A stretch of DNA of 64,000 nucleotides from assembly GCA_965285935.1 (NCBI GenBank), contig OZ260665.1, positions 72,230,001 through 72,294,000 of the forward strand, written 5' to 3'. Origin of the DNA: Ophelia neglecta. Taxonomy: Eukaryota. Shown here in pieces: positions 30,616 through 38,035 of this stretch. A model generated the notes under the pieces. The model ran no database searches and was not told where the DNA came from. It was given only the letters and a program-made list of their open reading frames with translations. The position numbers and the translations under genes were made by a program. Position 1 is the stretch's first letter. The number at the start of each line of letters is the position of its first letter.

Positions 30616-32380
30616 ATGATCATTTCCTATCCTGTCCACCAGGCCGTGCTGCTTGTCCTGTTGTGTTATGGGGCGAACGCGGTTTACCCGGCTGTGTATG
30701 ACTTTGACATTTACAGCGGCGAGCACCTGGACGACACTGTCATGCCGACAGACAGTACTGGCGTGTCCTTCCTACATGCTGTCCTGGTCGTCCATCAAAC
30801 TGACTGTAAACATCTAATAGACAAGTACAACATCTCTCCCACTCCCCTTCCCATGTCAAAAAATGTTCTCTTGCTTATGCATGACTACCAAATATCCAAC
30901 ACGCGGGTCTGGTATGATTTCAACGGCGGTGATATAAGAGATCGTTTCGACATCAGTAACTGCATAGACGTGCTTTTTCTGCCCAGAGGAAGTGTAGCTG
31001 ATTCATCCGCCTTACGCTGGGACCAGGAGGGAGAGCTAGAGTTCAAAGACTGGGTGTGGAAACAGATAGAGGTGGAGGTCACAATACACAATGGACTAGA
31101 CATCAGCATCTCAGTGGAAGTACTACAAACCGGACATACCAAAGGGCCGATGCCCTATCCCCAATTTCGGTTGCCCTCCGGCGCAACTAAGACAATAACC
31201 GTGTATGAGTCTACCCTGATTCGCGTTTACAGTGAGGTGTTGGACTTACAGAAGAGAGAAGCAATAGAAAAGCACATCGGAACATGGATTGTCAATGATA
31301 CGATGAGTATCGACGTCATCAGTGGACCTTCTGACGATGTCTTCACAGATATATTTAGCGAAGTCCAAAGGATCACAAAACAACAGGATTTCGAAGCCAT
31401 ACAAAGCGCCTGGAGCATCATGCAGGGCCACCTGTTGAATTTCAAGCAGCCATTGATTGTTCCCCAGTTTACTGAGACGGGCTACAAGAAACTAAAAATG
31501 CCAGCTGAGTGGTTTAAGATATTACATGACTTCTACCAGTCCAACATTAAAAACCGCGTTAACGAGTGGTGGACGTTCGGGCAGTCGATTATCAACCAGA
31601 ATGAGGTAGGCGCTATATAAATGTGTCATAATAACTAAATTCAAACTCCCTTTACAAGAAATTGTCGTTAACTGACTAGCAGATATTATTTGTAAACATC
31701 AAAAATTACAACGTTTTTCATGGACAGGATGTTCCTTTATTTCTGGCTATTAGGTACAGTGTAGTATGGTTTGGTTATCGGAGGAGGTCAAGCAGCAGGT
31801 AGCAGACGGACTGAGGGAACTCTTAGAAAAATGGGCCGGATGTGAGCTGGAGATGACTGCATTCTACGGCGTCAGGGAATATTTCGGAGGGAACATACTT
31901 CGCAACCACGTGGACAGGCTGGACACACATGTCATCTCGGCCATTATACAGATCGACAAAGACCTGGGGAACGCCGAGGACTGGCTCCTGGAGGTTATCG
32001 AGTACAATGGTAACCGCAACACCATCGCCCTCGAGCCGGGCGAGATGCTCCTTTATGAGTCAACTCGGCTCATACATGGCCGCCCCAAACCTTTCAAGGG
32101 AAACAAGTATGCCAATGTATTCCTACACTATCGACCTAAGTACGGGTGGAAGGACCAGTACATGCACGACAAGAACGGTTTCACACTCTACTTCCCTAAT
32201 GGCAAATCGGAGCCAATGATGCCGCTCAACACAGATTTAACATCCATGTATGGCTATCGAAGAAAAATGGTGGATGTTGTCGGGACTCTGCCGGGGCAGA
32301 CTGAGCCGAGAGGACCCGGTCTTAGGAAAGACTATAACCCTAACTTTGTTCCTCTGGGTCCTAAAAGACAGGAATTGTAA
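30616..32380 (+). CDS. ER-luminal 2OG-Fe(II) dioxygenase-like protein, paralogue A (538 aa)
   Basis: Exons 30616-31605 and 31754-32380, phase-0 GT-AG intron. Signal-peptide-like MIISYPVHQAVLLVLLCYGANA. Catalytic domain YGVREY...LRNHVDR...LEPGEMLLYE...LIHGR (HxD...H). C-terminal RQEL. Alternative in-frame ATG at 30604. Acceptor at 30548-30549 implies an upstream 5'-UTR exon. Confidence 0.88.
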
Positions 32381-34047
32381 ATAGCTTTAGTTTCCTATGG
32401 CATACGGCCGAATGGCTTTCACTGCAGTGCCACTTTCTAGCTTGAACGTTTAAGGTCACCATATCGGGACTGTTATCTCCAGCGACCTATATGTTTGTCC
32501 ACTCCTCAGAGCTAGCCGTGACTGGTGCCGAAATAATTTTCTCAGGAATTAATAAAAGGTGACCTTCGTCGGGTAACGGCGGTGATGTCAAGTAATGTTT
32601 ATTTGAAATTTGTTGGGCCTATCGGTGCGCACGTGGGCCTGGAACCTCGCTACCAAGGTACTCATAATATGCCAAGCCCACATTCATCGTATCTTAAAGC
32701 AAACGGTAGGAATTTATGAACATGAATTCACAGTCGGGTAAAGGCGATGGGTACCGAGAAAAGGGCCGGTATGTTCAATGATCAGAATGGAAACTGTGTA
32801 CCCTTTGTTATAAATGACTTTCACTGACAGGAATACGTATACATTTGTGATCGTAGTGTCACTCATATTTAGATACTAAGTGTCTCTGTCATTATGTGAA
32901 AGTATAAATCTAGAACGATGTGCAGATATAAGTTGTCTCAGTATTGATTGTTAACTATCCACACTCTTGTGGCATTGATAGCTCATCCTGTTACACTTAA
33001 CACTATTCAGTTATCAGTATATATATATAGTAACTTATTGTGCATGTTATGAGCTTTTCTAACCATACTGTGTATCAGAAATTACCTAATATTTCATTTA
33101 TGACTTTTCTGCACCCTTACAGGCTACGTATACTTTGTACCAAGTAGGTACAGTTTTTTATGTTCCGGTCACGACATTGGCAATATTTTCTTGTCGGGCA
33201 CATTCTCTGCTTGCAGCTGAAGAAAAGTTCATGTGGTTAATGTAAAGCCTCATTGCATGAGTATCTATTGGGAACCTTTTGAATGGTTATTAAAAAATGG
33301 CTGCTTCTTTGTTTAATGTTGTAGTAGCCCAACCTTTAATGGTGACGGGGTTGAATTAGTTTTATTAATCAATTAATATAGTATTATTTTTAAACACAAG
33401 CTGCTAAGGGGTAAAAAAAAATAAAAAAAAATAAAATAAAAATATATATATATATATTGCTATCAAAATATGTAGATGACCTATTTAAATCTAGAGAGTA
33501 ATCCCTTGTTCAACAACCTTGATATTGTTTTATCATGTTATTGCTTTCTAACTCAGTTGCTTATATATATATTTTTAAGACTTGATATTCACAGGGGTTG
33601 TTTGGGCTTTAAATGTAATCTTTTTAATTTTATCTTTTTGGTGTTATCTAGTCAATCATATTTGAAATACTCTTGCATGTGTTAATTTTATGGATTGGAT
33701 GTAACTAATTAATCATCATCAAAGTAAAATATTTTTTATATCTGATATTTTGTATTTGCATTTTGTTGTTTTGCTTGTTTCTTTAAGCCTACAGGCCTAT
33801 GTAAATATCTGTACATATTTGTAAATACTTGTATATAGTCTATATATGCAGATAAGTTGACTTTAATTAATATTATCAATCAATCAATCTGTAAACAAAC
33901 AATCAGCTAATGGGCATGAATAAAAATTCTTTATTTGAGTAAAATAGAAAATGCTAAGAATGAAAATAAACGAAAATAAATGGATAGAGCATATCTAGCA
34001 CTATCTAAAAAAGTACATTTTTAAAAATCACCCAATTATGACATTTA

Positions 34048-36323: not shown

Positions 36324-38035
36324 ATGGTCCTTTCTCATACCGCTTACCAGGCCGTGCTGCTTGTCCTGTTGTGTTATGGGGCGAACGCCGTTTACCCGGA
36401 TGTGTATGACTTTGCCATTTACAGTGGTGAGCACCTGGACGACACTGTCATGCCGACAGACAGTACTGGCGTGTCCTTCCTACATGCTGTCCTGGTCGTC
36501 CATCAAACTGACTGTAAACATCTAATAGACAAGTATGAAATATACCCCACTCGCCTGCCCATGTCTAAAAACGTTCTCTTACTCATTCATGATTACCAAA
36601 TATCCAACACTCATGTATGGTACAATTTCAACGGCGGTGATTTAAGGAATCGTTTCAACATCAGTAACTGTCTGGACGTGTTTTTTCTACCCAGAGGAAG
36701 CGTGTGTAACTCATCTGCCCTAAGCTGGGACCAGGAGGGAGATCTGGACTTCAGTGACTGGGTGTGGAAACAGATAGAAGTGGAGGTCACAATTCACAAT
36801 GGGCTAGAAATTGGCATCTCTGTGCAAGTACTACAAACCGGACAAGCCAAAGGGCCAATGGCTTATCCTCAATTCCGTTTGCCCCCCGGTGCAACGAAAG
36901 TGATAACCGTGTACGAGTCTAGCCTGATTCGCATTTACAGTGAGGAGTTGGATTTACAGAACAGACAGTTTATAGAAAAGCACATTGGAAAATGGATAGT
37001 TAATAACACGTTGAAAATTGACGTCGTTACTGAACCTGCAGACGATGTCTTCTCTGATATCTTTGTCGACATCCAAAGGATAACGACAGAGGATGATTTC
37101 CATGCGTTGGAAAGTGCATGGAACATCATGCAGCGCCACCTGTTGAACTTCAAGCAGCCACTTATCGTTCCCCAGTTTACTGAGACGGGCTACAAGAAAC
37201 TACAGATGCCAGCTGAATGGTTTAAGATACTACATGATTTCTATATTGATAACATTGAAAGCCGCGTTAGCGAAGCATGGACCTTCGGAGAGTCGATTAT
37301 AAACCAAAATGAGGTATGTGATAAAAGAAACGCCTGTTACTTAATTGTATATATTCAACAAATACGTGTATTTTGCATGGACTGTACGCACTCTATATTT
37401 CATGACAGGTGCAGTGTGGTATGGTTTGGTTATCGGAGGAGGTCAAGCAGCAGGTAGCAGACGGACTGAGGGAACTCTTAGAAAACTGGGCCGGATGTGA
37501 GCTGGAGATGACTGCATTCTACGGCGTCAGGGAATATTTCGGAGGGAACATACTTCGCAACCACGTGGACAGGCTGGAAACCCATGTCATATCGGCCATT
37601 ATCCAGATCGACAAAGACCTGGGGGACGCCGAGGACTGGCTCCTGGAGGTTATCGAGTACAATGGTAACCGCAGCACCATCGCCCTCGAGCCGGGCGAGA
37701 TGCTCCTTTATGAGTCAACGCGGCTCATACATGGCCGCCCCAAACCTTTCAAGGGAAACAAGTATGCCAATGTATTCCTACACTATCGACCTAAGTACGG
37801 GTGGAAGGACCTTTACGTCCACGATCAGAACGGCTTTACACTCTACTTCCCAGATAGCAAGTCGGAGCCATTGATGCCGCTCAACACAGACTTAACATCC
37901 ATGTATGGCTTTCATAGGAAAATGGTAGATGTTTTCGGGACTCTCCCGGGACAGACTGGGCCGAGAGGACCCGGTCTTAGGAAAGACTATAACCATAACT
38001 TTGCTCCTCGTGATCCTAAAAGGGATGAATTATAA
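36324..38035 (+). CDS. ER-luminal 2OG-Fe(II) dioxygenase-like protein, paralogue B (538 aa)
   Basis: Exons 36324-37313 and 37409-38035, the same 990 and 627 nt lengths and intron position as paralogue A. Same HVD...H motifs. C-terminal RDEL. Upstream acceptor at 36255-36256. Confidence 0.88.

What the first reader, a model, noticed from the sequence alone, without database searches (positions are those of the whole stretch)
30616..38035. Tandem pair of ER-retained 2OG-Fe(II) oxygenases that do not look like standard animal prolyl/lysyl hydroxylases
Seen: two intact 538-aa genes, each with a signal peptide, an HVD...H iron-binding triad and a KDEL-type C-terminus (RQEL, RDEL), with only one coding intron. 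Knowledge: the known animal ER 2OG oxygenases (P4HA, P3H/leprecan, PLOD, ASPH) have a basic 2OG-binding residue about ten positions after the distal His and their own N-terminal domains. Here the signature YGVREY..G..L..HVDR..H..SAI...D...W.LEV......LEPGEMLLYE...HGR..PF.G..YAN.F.HY matches, from my recall, an uncharacterised family in diatoms/algae, bacteria and marine phages, with patchy animal occurrence. Inference: a lineage-restricted, possibly horizontally acquired, now spliced and duplicated ER enzyme that modifies secreted proteins (shell, cuticle or adhesive matrix). The substrate is unknown.
Basis: partly seen in the sequence, partly recalled or inferred. Interest (0 to 1): 0.85.

Follow-up and report, generated by a model that had tools for sequence, protein, structure and literature searches.

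The report
ER oxygenase pair with thioredoxin/VHL-like domains
Two neighbouring, intact genes encode ER-resident iron/2-oxoglutarate oxygenases of an undescribed family that joins a thioredoxin-like and a VHL-like domain to a prolyl-hydroxylase-type catalytic fold; the family is common in marine protists, rare in animals and has at least 20 copies in this genome.

Summary
There are two tandem 538-aa genes, each with one phase-0 GT-AG coding intron, a signal-peptide-like N-terminus, an HVD...H triad and an RQEL or RDEL end. They are 80% (exon 1) and 90% (exon 2) identical, with dN/dS of 0.23-0.30.

They are not canonical P4HA, P3H or PLOD. Pfam gives no hit, and the profile comparison with canonical P4Hc domains gives a probability of 1.5%.

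Predicted structures show four parts: a thioredoxin-like domain without CxxC (Z about 10), a VHL-beta-like sandwich, a long helix, and a PHD2/P4H-type double-stranded beta-helix (Z 14-16). The sandwich is supported by Foldseek (E 3.6e-4) and by hhalign against this genome's own VHL (80%).

The catalytic domain has about 2,600 relatives. Named ones come from an annelid, foraminifera, a diatom, cyanophages and Actinomycetota; cluster labels add haptophytes and more diatoms.

The pair belongs to a family of at least 20 copies on four chromosomes, with 0-1 introns at differing positions. On the tree it sits in a clade of -xEL proteins that includes the annelid Dimorphilus, next to protist proteins with the same architecture. 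Direct bacterial or phage transfer is therefore not supported. Older transfer between eukaryotes, or patchy loss, stays open.

The most likely function is hydroxylation of secretory proteins in the ER lumen. The substrate is unknown, and no RNA data were available.

The parts
30616..31605 (+). Gene 1, exon 1 (330 aa). It holds the signal-peptide-like segment, the thioredoxin-like domain, the VHL-beta-like sandwich, the long helix and the first strands and helix of the catalytic domain.
   Evidence: ORF and donor site. AF2 model m34a7e60c23d4, pLDDT 84. An alternative ATG lies at 30604.
30616..30681 (+). Signal-peptide-like N-terminus of gene 1 (aa 1-22, ...AVLLVLLCYGANA|VY).
   Evidence: Hydropathy maximum 2.62 over 10 residues, and small residues at -3 and -1. 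By inspection only; SignalP was not run.
30688..31071 (+). Thioredoxin-like domain (aa 25-152). It has no CxxC motif. Cys64 and Cys116 are conserved in the family.
   Evidence: VIA-align Z 10.0-10.4 with 103-112 residues aligned at rmsd 2.6-3.0 to QSOX1, ERdj5, PDI and ERp46 thioredoxin domains. The cysteines are conserved in 25/29 and 24/29 sequences.
31069..31320 (+). VHL-beta-like beta-sandwich (aa 152-235). The hydroxyproline-pocket His and Trp of VHL are replaced (TVYESTLI).
   Evidence: Foldseek to pVHL chains, E 3.6e-4. Pfam VHL hits below threshold in 4 of 44 relatives. hhalign of family profile A5 against this genome's own VHL exon gives 80%, E 1.4e-5. Motif table.
31342..31458 (+). 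Long connecting helix (aa 243-281).
   Evidence: DSSP on the AF2 models.
31606..31753 (+). Gene 1 intron (148 nt, GT-AG, phase 0). It splits the catalytic domain.
   Evidence: The position is shared with gene 2, the chromosome-9 paralogues and the L001 orthologue.
31754..32380 (+). Gene 1, exon 2 (208 aa plus stop): catalytic DSBH core and C-terminal tail ending RQEL.
   Evidence: 2,607 relatives at E<=1e-3. The DSBH fold was shown on the intronless paralogue, Z 14-16 against PHD2, PPHD and vCPH.
31907..31915 (+). HVD of the metal triad, gene 1 (exon-2 aa 52-54).
   Evidence: His conserved in 235/236 and Asp in 232/236 family sequences.
32075..32083 (+). Distal His108-Gly-Arg110 of gene 1 (LIHGR).
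   Evidence: His conserved in 234/236 and Arg in 234/236.
32366..32377 (+). RQEL, a KDEL-type ER retrieval signal, gene 1.
   Evidence: 55 of the 161 proteins held at that stage end in -EL. 25 of 68 full-length non-fused relatives end in -xEL, and 20 of those 25 also have a signal-peptide-like N-terminus.
36324..37313 (+). Gene 2, exon 1 (330 aa), 80% identical to exon 1 of gene 1.
37314..37408 (+). Gene 2 intron (95 nt, GT-AG, phase 0).
   Evidence: It does not align with the gene 1 intron.
37409..38035 (+). Gene 2, exon 2 (208 aa plus stop). HVD at 37562-37570, His108 at 37730-37732, RDEL at 38021-38032.
   Evidence: dS of the first 405 nt against gene 1 is only 0.066, which points to gene conversion.

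Best explanation
The two genes are real paralogues kept by selection. They belong to a distinct family of soluble Fe(II)/2-oxoglutarate dioxygenases that reside in the ER lumen and that has expanded in this lineage.

Each protein is built as follows: signal peptide, thioredoxin-like domain without CxxC, VHL-beta-like sandwich, long helix, PHD/P4H-type double-stranded beta-helix, and a KDEL-type C-terminus.

Inferred mechanism: the protein enters the ER and is retrieved through RQEL or RDEL. The HxD...H triad binds Fe(II), and 2OG and O2 are used to hydroxylate a side chain of proteins passing through the secretory pathway, most plausibly proline. The thioredoxin-like and VHL-like domains would act as built-in modules for holding and recognising the substrate, a role comparable to that of the PDI subunit and the peptide-binding domain of collagen P4H.

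Shown here: gene structure, purifying selection, predicted folds, conserved metal ligands, ER-type signals, family distribution and family expansion. Inferred only: catalytic activity, ER residence in vivo, and the nature of the substrate.

The family came to this animal lineage from, or shares it with, other eukaryotes; a direct origin from bacteria or phages is not supported.
For: - Gene models, with the intron position conserved across paralogues and in another genome.
- dN/dS of 0.23-0.30 between the two copies.
- AF2 model of the intronless same-genome paralogue L006 (59% identical in the catalytic core): pLDDT 90.7. Its residues 279-475 match PHD2, Pseudomonas PPHD, viral collagen P4H and PiuC-like proteins at Z 14-16 over 160-185 residues.
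- Conserved in 232-235 of 236 relatives: His52, Asp54, His108, Arg41, Tyr43, Arg110 and His125.
- Weak PF13640 hits in relatives, one at threshold (P0082, 27.4 bits).
- Thioredoxin-like fold at Z about 10.
- VHL-beta homology from Foldseek (E 3.6e-4), Pfam hits below threshold, hhalign against this genome's own VHL (80%, E 1.4e-5) and BLASTP (2e-4).
- 34 of 92 relatives keep the [ST][FY]xGHx[FW] motif, which in VHL contacts hydroxyproline (residue roles from established knowledge of pVHL Ser111, His115 and Trp117).
- ER-type signals across the family: 50 of 68 full-length eukaryote-type members have a hydrophobic N-terminus. The bacterial-type fusions have essentially neither signal (1 of 10 with such an N-terminus, none ending -xEL).
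- Some bacterial-type relatives fuse this domain to a canonical P4Hc domain (PF13640 plus PF13661).
- Tree: the window pair lies within an -xEL clade that includes Dimorphilus, sister to a protist and foraminiferal clade.
Against: - No transcript, protein or activity data exist for these genes. The runs that hold the locus are DNA only.
- The fold match does not separate protein prolyl hydroxylases from free-amino-acid hydroxylases and halogenases: BesD, HalB and HalD tie at Z 14.4-14.7.
- The VHL-type pocket His and Trp are lost in the window proteins and throughout the animal clade, so recognition of hydroxyproline cannot be assumed here.
- The usual 2OG-binding Lys or Arg on strand VIII is not conserved.
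- The full-length fold was computed on a paralogue, not on the joined window protein.
- The signal peptide was judged by eye and hydropathy only.
Confidence: 0.6

Rival explanations
1. The enzymes hydroxylate a free small molecule in the secretory pathway, for example a basic amino acid or another metabolite, rather than protein side chains.
For: The structural neighbours include the free lysine/ornithine halogenases and hydroxylases BesD, HalA, HalB and HalD, and SnoN, at the same Z as PHD2. The atlas feature search lists HalD-family clusters as the nearest ones that carry a Pfam family. There are weak local hits to the KDO1, GntD and TMLD 'PGE..L....HGR' region.
Against: ER retrieval signals and fused thioredoxin-like and VHL-like domains, both typical protein-binding modules of the ER and of Hyp recognition, fit a protein substrate better. 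The local hits are far below any threshold. Fusion to a canonical P4Hc domain in bacteria points to peptide chemistry.
Confidence: 0.15
2. The genes were recently acquired by direct horizontal transfer from a bacterium or a marine phage into this animal lineage, and gained introns and duplicated afterwards.
For: - Relatives exist in cyanophages (41% identity in S-SCSM1) and in Actinomycetota.
- Copies have 0-1 introns at positions that differ between subfamilies: C1 has none, C2 has one at about aa 119, C8 and C9 have one at aa 330.
- Only one named animal appears among the relatives.
Against: The phage and bacterial proteins lack the thioredoxin-like and VHL-like domains, the signal peptide and the -xEL end, and they sit in a different part of the tree. 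The nearest relatives are eukaryotic proteins with the full architecture, from at least four other large, repeat-rich eukaryotic assemblies and from Dimorphilus, where one intronless copy lies between wnt genes. The subfamilies diverged before the split from the species behind L001 and L014.
Confidence: 0.07
3. The family is an old eukaryotic ER enzyme that was inherited vertically and lost many times, so its presence in this animal needs no transfer at all.
For: The architecture is shared between the animal clade and foraminifera, Rhizaria and MMETSP protists (27-38% identity over 85-100% of the length). The animal-type and protist-type clades are sisters on the tree. Dimorphilus carries two copies in ordinary animal gene neighbourhoods.
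Against: No other named animal, fungus or plant appears among the hits of two searches of the 5.8-billion-protein collection that carries source names; the separate 1.84-billion-representative scan carries no names. Vertical descent would therefore need very many losses. The intron-poor structure with unshared intron positions is unusual for an ancient animal gene. The word-indexed search and the withheld organism names limit this test.
Confidence: 0.3
4. The ORFs are decaying or non-functional copies, for example processed pseudogenes or contaminant DNA, and not working host genes.
For: No RNA evidence. The surroundings are rich in reverse-transcriptase fragments. Several chromosome-2 copies carry stop codons.
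Against: Both copies have intact frames, canonical splice sites conserved across species and all catalytic residues, and dN/dS is 0.23-0.30 at dS 0.5. Read depth matches the flanks apart from collapse of the paralogues.
Confidence: 0.05

Closest known systems
HIF prolyl hydroxylase PHD2/EGLN1 and bacterial PPHD (PHD-type prolyl hydroxylases)
   Same: The DSBH fold with its N-terminal helices matches at Z 14-15 over about 170-185 residues. Both have an HxD...H triad and the R/Y-x(8-10)-HxD spacing on strands I and II.
   Different: Sequence identity is only 10-14%. The family has no conserved Arg at +9 on strand VIII; instead Arg at -11 from HxD, Arg at +2 and His at +17 from the distal His are invariant. 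It is lumenal, with a signal peptide and KDEL-type end, not cytosolic. It carries fused thioredoxin-like and VHL-like domains.
Collagen prolyl 4-hydroxylase (P4HA with the PDI/P4HB subunit) and viral/algal P4H (vCPH, Cr-P4H; Pfam PF13640)
   Same: Both are ER-lumenal 2OG oxygenases. vCPH matches at Z 14.4. Collagen P4H works together with a thioredoxin-fold partner (PDI) that supplies the KDEL signal; here a thioredoxin-like domain and the KDEL-type signal are in the same chain (one search lists the C-P4H-II PDI chain at Z 9.4).
   Different: PF13640 is not matched by the window proteins. hhalign against canonical P4Hc gives 1.5%. There is no P4HA N-terminal dimerisation or peptide-substrate-binding (TPR) domain. 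The thioredoxin-like domain lacks CxxC. The genome's canonical PF13640 loci lie elsewhere.
von Hippel-Lindau protein beta domain (PF01847)
   Same: The second domain is a homologous beta-sandwich followed by a helix. Protist members keep the Ser/Thr, His and aromatic residues that in pVHL hold hydroxyproline.
   Different: It is fused to an oxygenase and targeted to the ER, and is not part of a cytosolic elongin-binding E3 adaptor. The pocket His and Trp are replaced in the window proteins. The Pfam gathering threshold is not reached.
Cyanophage 'ferrochelatase' / 2OG-Fe(II) oxygenase genes (phrog_2954; S-SCSM1 gp114, S-MbCM6 gp038)
   Same: They share the catalytic domain family (41% and 30% identity; PHROG E 2.5e-16).
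   Different: They are single-domain proteins of about 180-230 aa without a signal peptide, thioredoxin-like or VHL-like domains or a KDEL-type end. Their function is equally unknown, and the 'ferrochelatase' label looks wrong.

Membership tests
Fe(II)/2-oxoglutarate dioxygenase superfamily | Double-stranded beta-helix (jelly-roll) catalytic fold | tested here: met
   AF2 model of the same-genome intronless paralogue L006 (pLDDT 90.7). Z 14-16 over 160-185 residues against PHD2, PPHD, vCPH and BesD. The joined window protein itself was not folded.
Fe(II)/2-oxoglutarate dioxygenase superfamily | HxD/E...H metal-binding triad | tested here: met
   HVD at exon-2 residues 52-54 and His108 in both genes. 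Conserved in 235, 232 and 234 of 236 relatives.
Fe(II)/2-oxoglutarate dioxygenase superfamily | Basic residue that binds the 2OG C5 carboxylate | tested here: inconclusive
   No conserved Lys or Arg at +9 or +10. Invariant Arg41, Arg110 and His125 are candidates.
Fe(II)/2-oxoglutarate dioxygenase superfamily | 2OG-dependent oxidation activity | not testable with these tools
   Needs a biochemical assay.
Collagen-type prolyl 4-hydroxylase (P4Hc, Pfam PF13640; P4HA) | Match to PF13640 at the gathering threshold | tested here: not met
   No hit at E<=1 for any of the four window exons. Relatives score mostly below threshold, with one at 27.4 against a cut-off of 27. hhalign against canonical P4Hc gives 1.5%.
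Collagen-type prolyl 4-hydroxylase (P4Hc, Pfam PF13640; P4HA) | Conserved Lys about 10 residues after the distal His, and the P4HA N-terminal and peptide-substrate-binding domains | tested here: not met
   The +9 and +10 columns are variable. The N-terminal region is thioredoxin-like plus VHL-like.
Lysyl hydroxylase PLOD / prolyl 3-hydroxylase (leprecan) / ASPH | Their accessory domains (glycosyltransferase, TPR) and family-specific catalytic profiles | tested here: not met
   No Pfam family matched. None of these appears among the top structural neighbours.
Soluble ER-resident proteins with KDEL-type retrieval | C-terminal [KRHQSA][DENQ]EL | tested here: met
   RQEL and RDEL. Paralogues and orthologues end in KDEL, KVEL or KEEL.
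Soluble ER-resident proteins with KDEL-type retrieval | Cleavable N-terminal signal peptide | tested here: inconclusive
   Hydrophobic core plus an ANA|V site, by hydropathy and inspection. No dedicated predictor was run.
VHL beta domain (PF01847) | Homology to the VHL beta-sandwich | tested here: met
   Foldseek E 3.6e-4. hhalign of the family profile against this genome's VHL exon gives 80%, E 1.4e-5. BLASTP of P0036 against that VHL gives 2e-4. Pfam hits are below threshold only.
VHL beta domain (PF01847) | Hydroxyproline pocket (Ser111, His115, Trp117 of human pVHL) | tested here: not met
   The window proteins read TVYESTLI and TVYESSLI where VHL reads NTFVGHPW. 34 of 92 relatives, none in the animal clade and those with a traceable source from protists, keep the motif.
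Thioredoxin / PDI family | Thioredoxin fold | tested here: met
   Z 10.0-10.4 with 103-112 residues aligned.
Thioredoxin / PDI family | CxxC redox motif | tested here: not met
   There is a single Cys at the first CxxC position (TDCKHL) and a second conserved Cys at the cis-Pro-loop position.

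The most novel reading that the evidence does not exclude
The family is a single-chain 'writer plus reader' of hydroxyproline in the secretory pathway. The VHL-like domain, whose Hyp-pocket motif is intact in many relatives (protists where the source is known), would bind an already hydroxylated proline. 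The PHD-like domain would then add a further hydroxyl group, either processively along Pro-rich secreted proteins or on the same ring. That would make these proteins candidates for modifications whose enzymes are unknown, such as dihydroxyproline or unusual Hyp positions in wall, cuticle or adhesive proteins. It would also be a non-metazoan pairing of the VHL and prolyl-hydroxylase folds, bearing on where the animal PHD-VHL oxygen-sensing pair came from.
Probability: 0.15. Interest if true: 0.85.

Novelty: new variant of a known kind. Interest (0 to 1): 0.62.

Why it matters
Animal ER 2OG oxygenases (collagen P4H, P3H, PLOD, ASPH) are a small and well-mapped set. A further ER-targeted family has no Pfam model, a different constellation of conserved residues around the 2OG site, and fused thioredoxin-like and VHL-like domains. 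That points to an unrecognised protein modification system in marine protists and in at least some annelid-like animals.

The 20-fold expansion here suggests a role tied to the lineage's secreted materials.

The VHL-like domain joined to a PHD-like domain outside the HIF pathway is unexpected and can be tested directly with Hyp-peptide binding and hydroxylation assays.

The result also corrects a likely misannotation, 'ferrochelatase', of the cyanophage homologues.

Tried and rejected
- Pfam and NCBIfam on the window exons gave nothing significant.
- PDB sequence search with exon 2 gave only a 29-residue KDO1 match at E 2.3.
- Profile A5 against PDB sequences was swamped by immunoglobulin-like hits, and VHL was not among the best 60 shown. 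Single-sequence phmmer of P0144 also missed VHL. The homology case therefore rests on Foldseek, Pfam hits below threshold, and hhalign and BLASTP against this genome's own VHL.
- The search for related loci on bacterial genomes failed twice because the alignments had no conserved stretch long enough. Bacterial distribution is therefore known only from named database hits.
- The sequencing-run search returned only DNA runs from one sample. Laying them showed even coverage and no joints, so there is no information on expression or splicing.
- The exon 1 search found only one relative (P0001), because of the word index.
- Six literature searches found no description of this family or of a VHL-P4H fusion. 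A Mnemiopsis HGT paper lists 2OG oxygenases of eukaryotic origin, but those carry a Pfam domain and I did not link them to this family.
- The organism's identity could not be obtained, because names are coded.
Exons were searched separately by reference, and the intronless paralogue L006:1453-2967:- served as the full-length proxy.

Full report
**Observation.** The region holds two same-strand genes 5.7 kb apart.
- Gene 1: exon 1 at 30616-31605, a 148-nt GT-AG intron, and exon 2 at 31754-32380.
- Gene 2: exon 1 at 36324-37313, a 95-nt GT-AG intron, and exon 2 at 37409-38035.
- Both introns are phase 0 and fall between ...NQNE and VQC(S/G)MVWLS. Each gene encodes 330 + 208 = 538 residues.
- The proteins are 80% (exon 1) and 90% (exon 2) identical.
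- The same splice position occurs in two paralogues on chromosome 9. It also occurs in the orthologue of another assembly, where P0001 and P0002 lie on one contig and are joined by gtgagt...tttcag.
- Nei-Gojobori dN/dS is 0.23 (exon 1, dS 0.50) and 0.30 (exon 2). Introns and flanks no longer align. So the duplication is old and both copies are under purifying selection.
- The first 405 nt of exon 2 have a dS of only 0.066, which indicates gene conversion across the catalytic core.
Exons were used separately by reference, and an intronless paralogue served as the full-length proxy.

**What the protein is.** Pfam gives no hit at E<=1 for any exon.
- A whole-library HMMER scan with exon 2 finds 2,607 cluster representatives at E<=1e-3 and 59 at E<=1e-30.
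- This genome itself holds at least 22 matches to the catalytic domain:
  - one intronless 505-aa copy on chromosome 1 (L006:1453-2967:-, ending KDEL);
  - about 15 copies in a 1.7-Mb stretch of chromosome 2, with an intron near residue 119 and several carrying stop codons;
  - the window pair on chromosome 8;
  - a similar pair on chromosome 9.
- AlphaFold2 on the chromosome-1 paralogue with 43 relatives gave pLDDT 90.7 and pTM 0.88. Residues 279-475 match PHD2, Pseudomonas PPHD, the chlorella-virus collagen P4H, PiuC-like proteins and the BesD/Hal amino-acid halogenases. Foldseek gives E 1e-7 to 1e-5, and VIA-align gives Z 14-16 over 160-185 residues.
- Across 236 family sequences the HxD...H ligands are conserved in 235, 232 and 234. 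Also nearly invariant are Arg at -11 and Tyr at -9 from the first His, Arg at +2 and His at +17 from the distal His. The positions +9 and +10, where PHD2 and P4H carry Arg or Lys, are variable. The window proteins happen to have Asn at +9 and Lys at +10.
- A profile comparison with canonical P4Hc domains gives a probability of only 1.5%. The genome's PF13640 loci lie elsewhere. The family is therefore a separate branch of the PHD/P4H-like fold and not a member of P4HA, P3H or PLOD.

**N-terminal half.** The AF2 model of window exon 1 has pLDDT 84.
- Residues 25-152 form a thioredoxin fold, with Z 10.0-10.4 against QSOX1, ERdj5, PDI and ERp46 domains. It lacks CxxC. It has two family-conserved cysteines, one at the first CxxC position and one at the cis-Pro-loop position.
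- Residues 152-235 form a beta-sandwich whose best Foldseek matches are all pVHL chains (E 3.6e-4).
- Further tests support homology of this sandwich with VHL:
  - Four of 44 relatives hit Pfam VHL below threshold, at the right place.
  - The family profile aligns with this genome's own VHL exon (found) at 80% hhalign probability, E 1.4e-5.
  - One protist member gives BLASTP E 2e-4 against that VHL.
- Of 92 family proteins with this domain, 34 keep [ST][FY]xGHx[FW]. This aligns with NTFVGHPW of the genome's VHL, which corresponds to the Ser111/His115/Trp117 hydroxyproline pocket of human pVHL (residue roles from established knowledge).
- The window genes (TVYESTLI), the other copies in this genome and Dimorphilus have lost the His.
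- This agrees with an earlier first-stage note on the same window (s1-735192).

**Localisation signals.** Both proteins start with a hydrophobic core followed by ANA|VY, and end in RQEL or RDEL.
- Among full-length eukaryote-type relatives, 50 of 68 have such an N-terminus, and 25 end in -xEL.
- The bacterial-type proteins fuse a canonical P4Hc domain (PF13640 plus PF13661) in front of this domain. They have essentially neither signal: 1 of 10 has such an N-terminus, and none ends in -xEL.

**Distribution and origin.**
- Named relatives:
  - two proteins of the annelid Dimorphilus gyrociliatus, full length and 36-37% identical;
  - the foraminifera Ammonia and Reticulomyxa;
  - the diatom Fragilaria;
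  - the rhizarian Lapot gusevi, plus MMETSP transcripts;
  - Actinomycetota MAGs;
  - Synechococcus myoviruses.
- The atlas clusters nearest to the domain are labelled Uroviricota and Haptophyta, and those nearest to the full-length protein Bacillariophyta.
- Tree of 236 sequences over 139 columns (quick IQ-TREE, SH-aLRT support):
  - The window pair groups with the chromosome-9 pair and P0002 (support 97).
  - This group lies inside a 19-row clade with this genome's other subfamilies and the sequences of a related assembly.
  - That clade lies inside a 48-row clade consisting mostly of -xEL proteins, which includes Dimorphilus.
  - The sister group is a protist and foraminiferal clade.
  - The bacterial, phage and diatom groups branch further away.
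- Relatives from at least three other large, repeat-rich eukaryotic assemblies are intronless and also arranged in tandem. One Dimorphilus copy is intronless and lies between wnt genes.
- These results exclude contamination and make direct bacterial or phage transfer unlikely. Only one animal is named, the genes are intron-poor, and intron positions are not shared between subfamilies. This leaves two options open: transfer between eukaryotes, or ancient descent with many losses. The organism's name is withheld, so finer placement was not possible.

**Function.**
- Shown: predicted folds, conserved metal ligands, targeting signals, purifying selection and family expansion.
- Inferred: an ER-lumenal hydroxylase acting on secretory proteins. 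Proline is the most plausible target for three reasons: the PHD/P4H-type fold, the fusion with canonical P4Hc in bacteria, and the attached domain, which is homologous to the one known hydroxyproline reader.
- The free-amino-acid hydroxylase alternative cannot be excluded from the fold alone.
- No RNA data exist in the accessible runs. The three runs holding the locus are DNA from one sample and show no joints.

**Verdict.** The horizontal-transfer and substrate ideas remain unproven, and the 'pair' is one corner of a large family. The thioredoxin-like, VHL-like and PHD-like architecture with a KDEL-type end appears undescribed in the searchable literature. I rate it a new variant of a known kind, of moderate to high interest.

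Noticed in passing
L017:1354-1893 (Synechococcus phage S-MbCM6) and PHROG families phrog_2954 and phrog_3531: The cyanophage homologues of this 2OG-oxygenase domain are annotated 'ferrochelatase' in GenBank and PHROGs. The window domain matches phrog_2954 at E 2.5e-16, so the label is probably a propagated misannotation.
   Followed up: partly
L016:167-1998 (Synechococcus phage S-SCSM1): The phage homologue (41% identical) lies directly after a GDP-fucose protein O-fucosyltransferase gene and near a second 2OG-Fe(II) oxygenase. This hints at a protein hydroxylation and glycosylation cassette.
   Followed up: no
window 31754-32158 compared with 37409-37813: Synonymous divergence between the two genes falls to 0.066 in the catalytic core, against 0.50 in exon 1 and 0.38 in the C-terminal tail. 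This is a gene-conversion tract.
   Followed up: yes
window 34008-34560: A 38-nt tandem repeat (TACATGTATATATGGTCCCCCTTACACTGGTTTTAAAG-like units) lies in the spacer between the two genes. Read depth peaks nearby (33900-34099), so it is a dispersed repeat.
   Followed up: no
window 22010-24425, 28585-29223, 46791-48029 (-), 50574-52786: ORF fragments with reverse-transcriptase (RVT_1) and zf-RVT domains, that is LINE-like retroelement remains, flank the gene pair.
   Followed up: partly
G000 C2:110.1-111.8 Mb (loci L007-L013): A cluster of about 15 further family copies, with 402-aa main exons ending KDEL, KEEL or RDEL and an intron near residue 119. Several copies carry in-frame stops, so the array is undergoing birth and death of copies.
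   Followed up: partly
L021:1501-1722 (G000 C2:72062501-72062722) and L022: The genome has a genuine VHL beta-domain exon (73 bits to PF01847). A weaker VHL-like match containing a stop codon lies on chromosome 9.
   Followed up: partly
P0085, P0116, P0134, P0188-P0244 (metagenomic and Actinomycetota proteins): Bacterial-type relatives carry a canonical P4Hc domain (PF13640 plus PF13661) N-terminal to this family's domain, giving two different hydroxylase domains in one chain.
   Followed up: partly
window 58519-64000: An earlier first-stage note reports an SLC6 transporter gene here. I used it only as context for an animal host genome and did not examine it.
   Followed up: no
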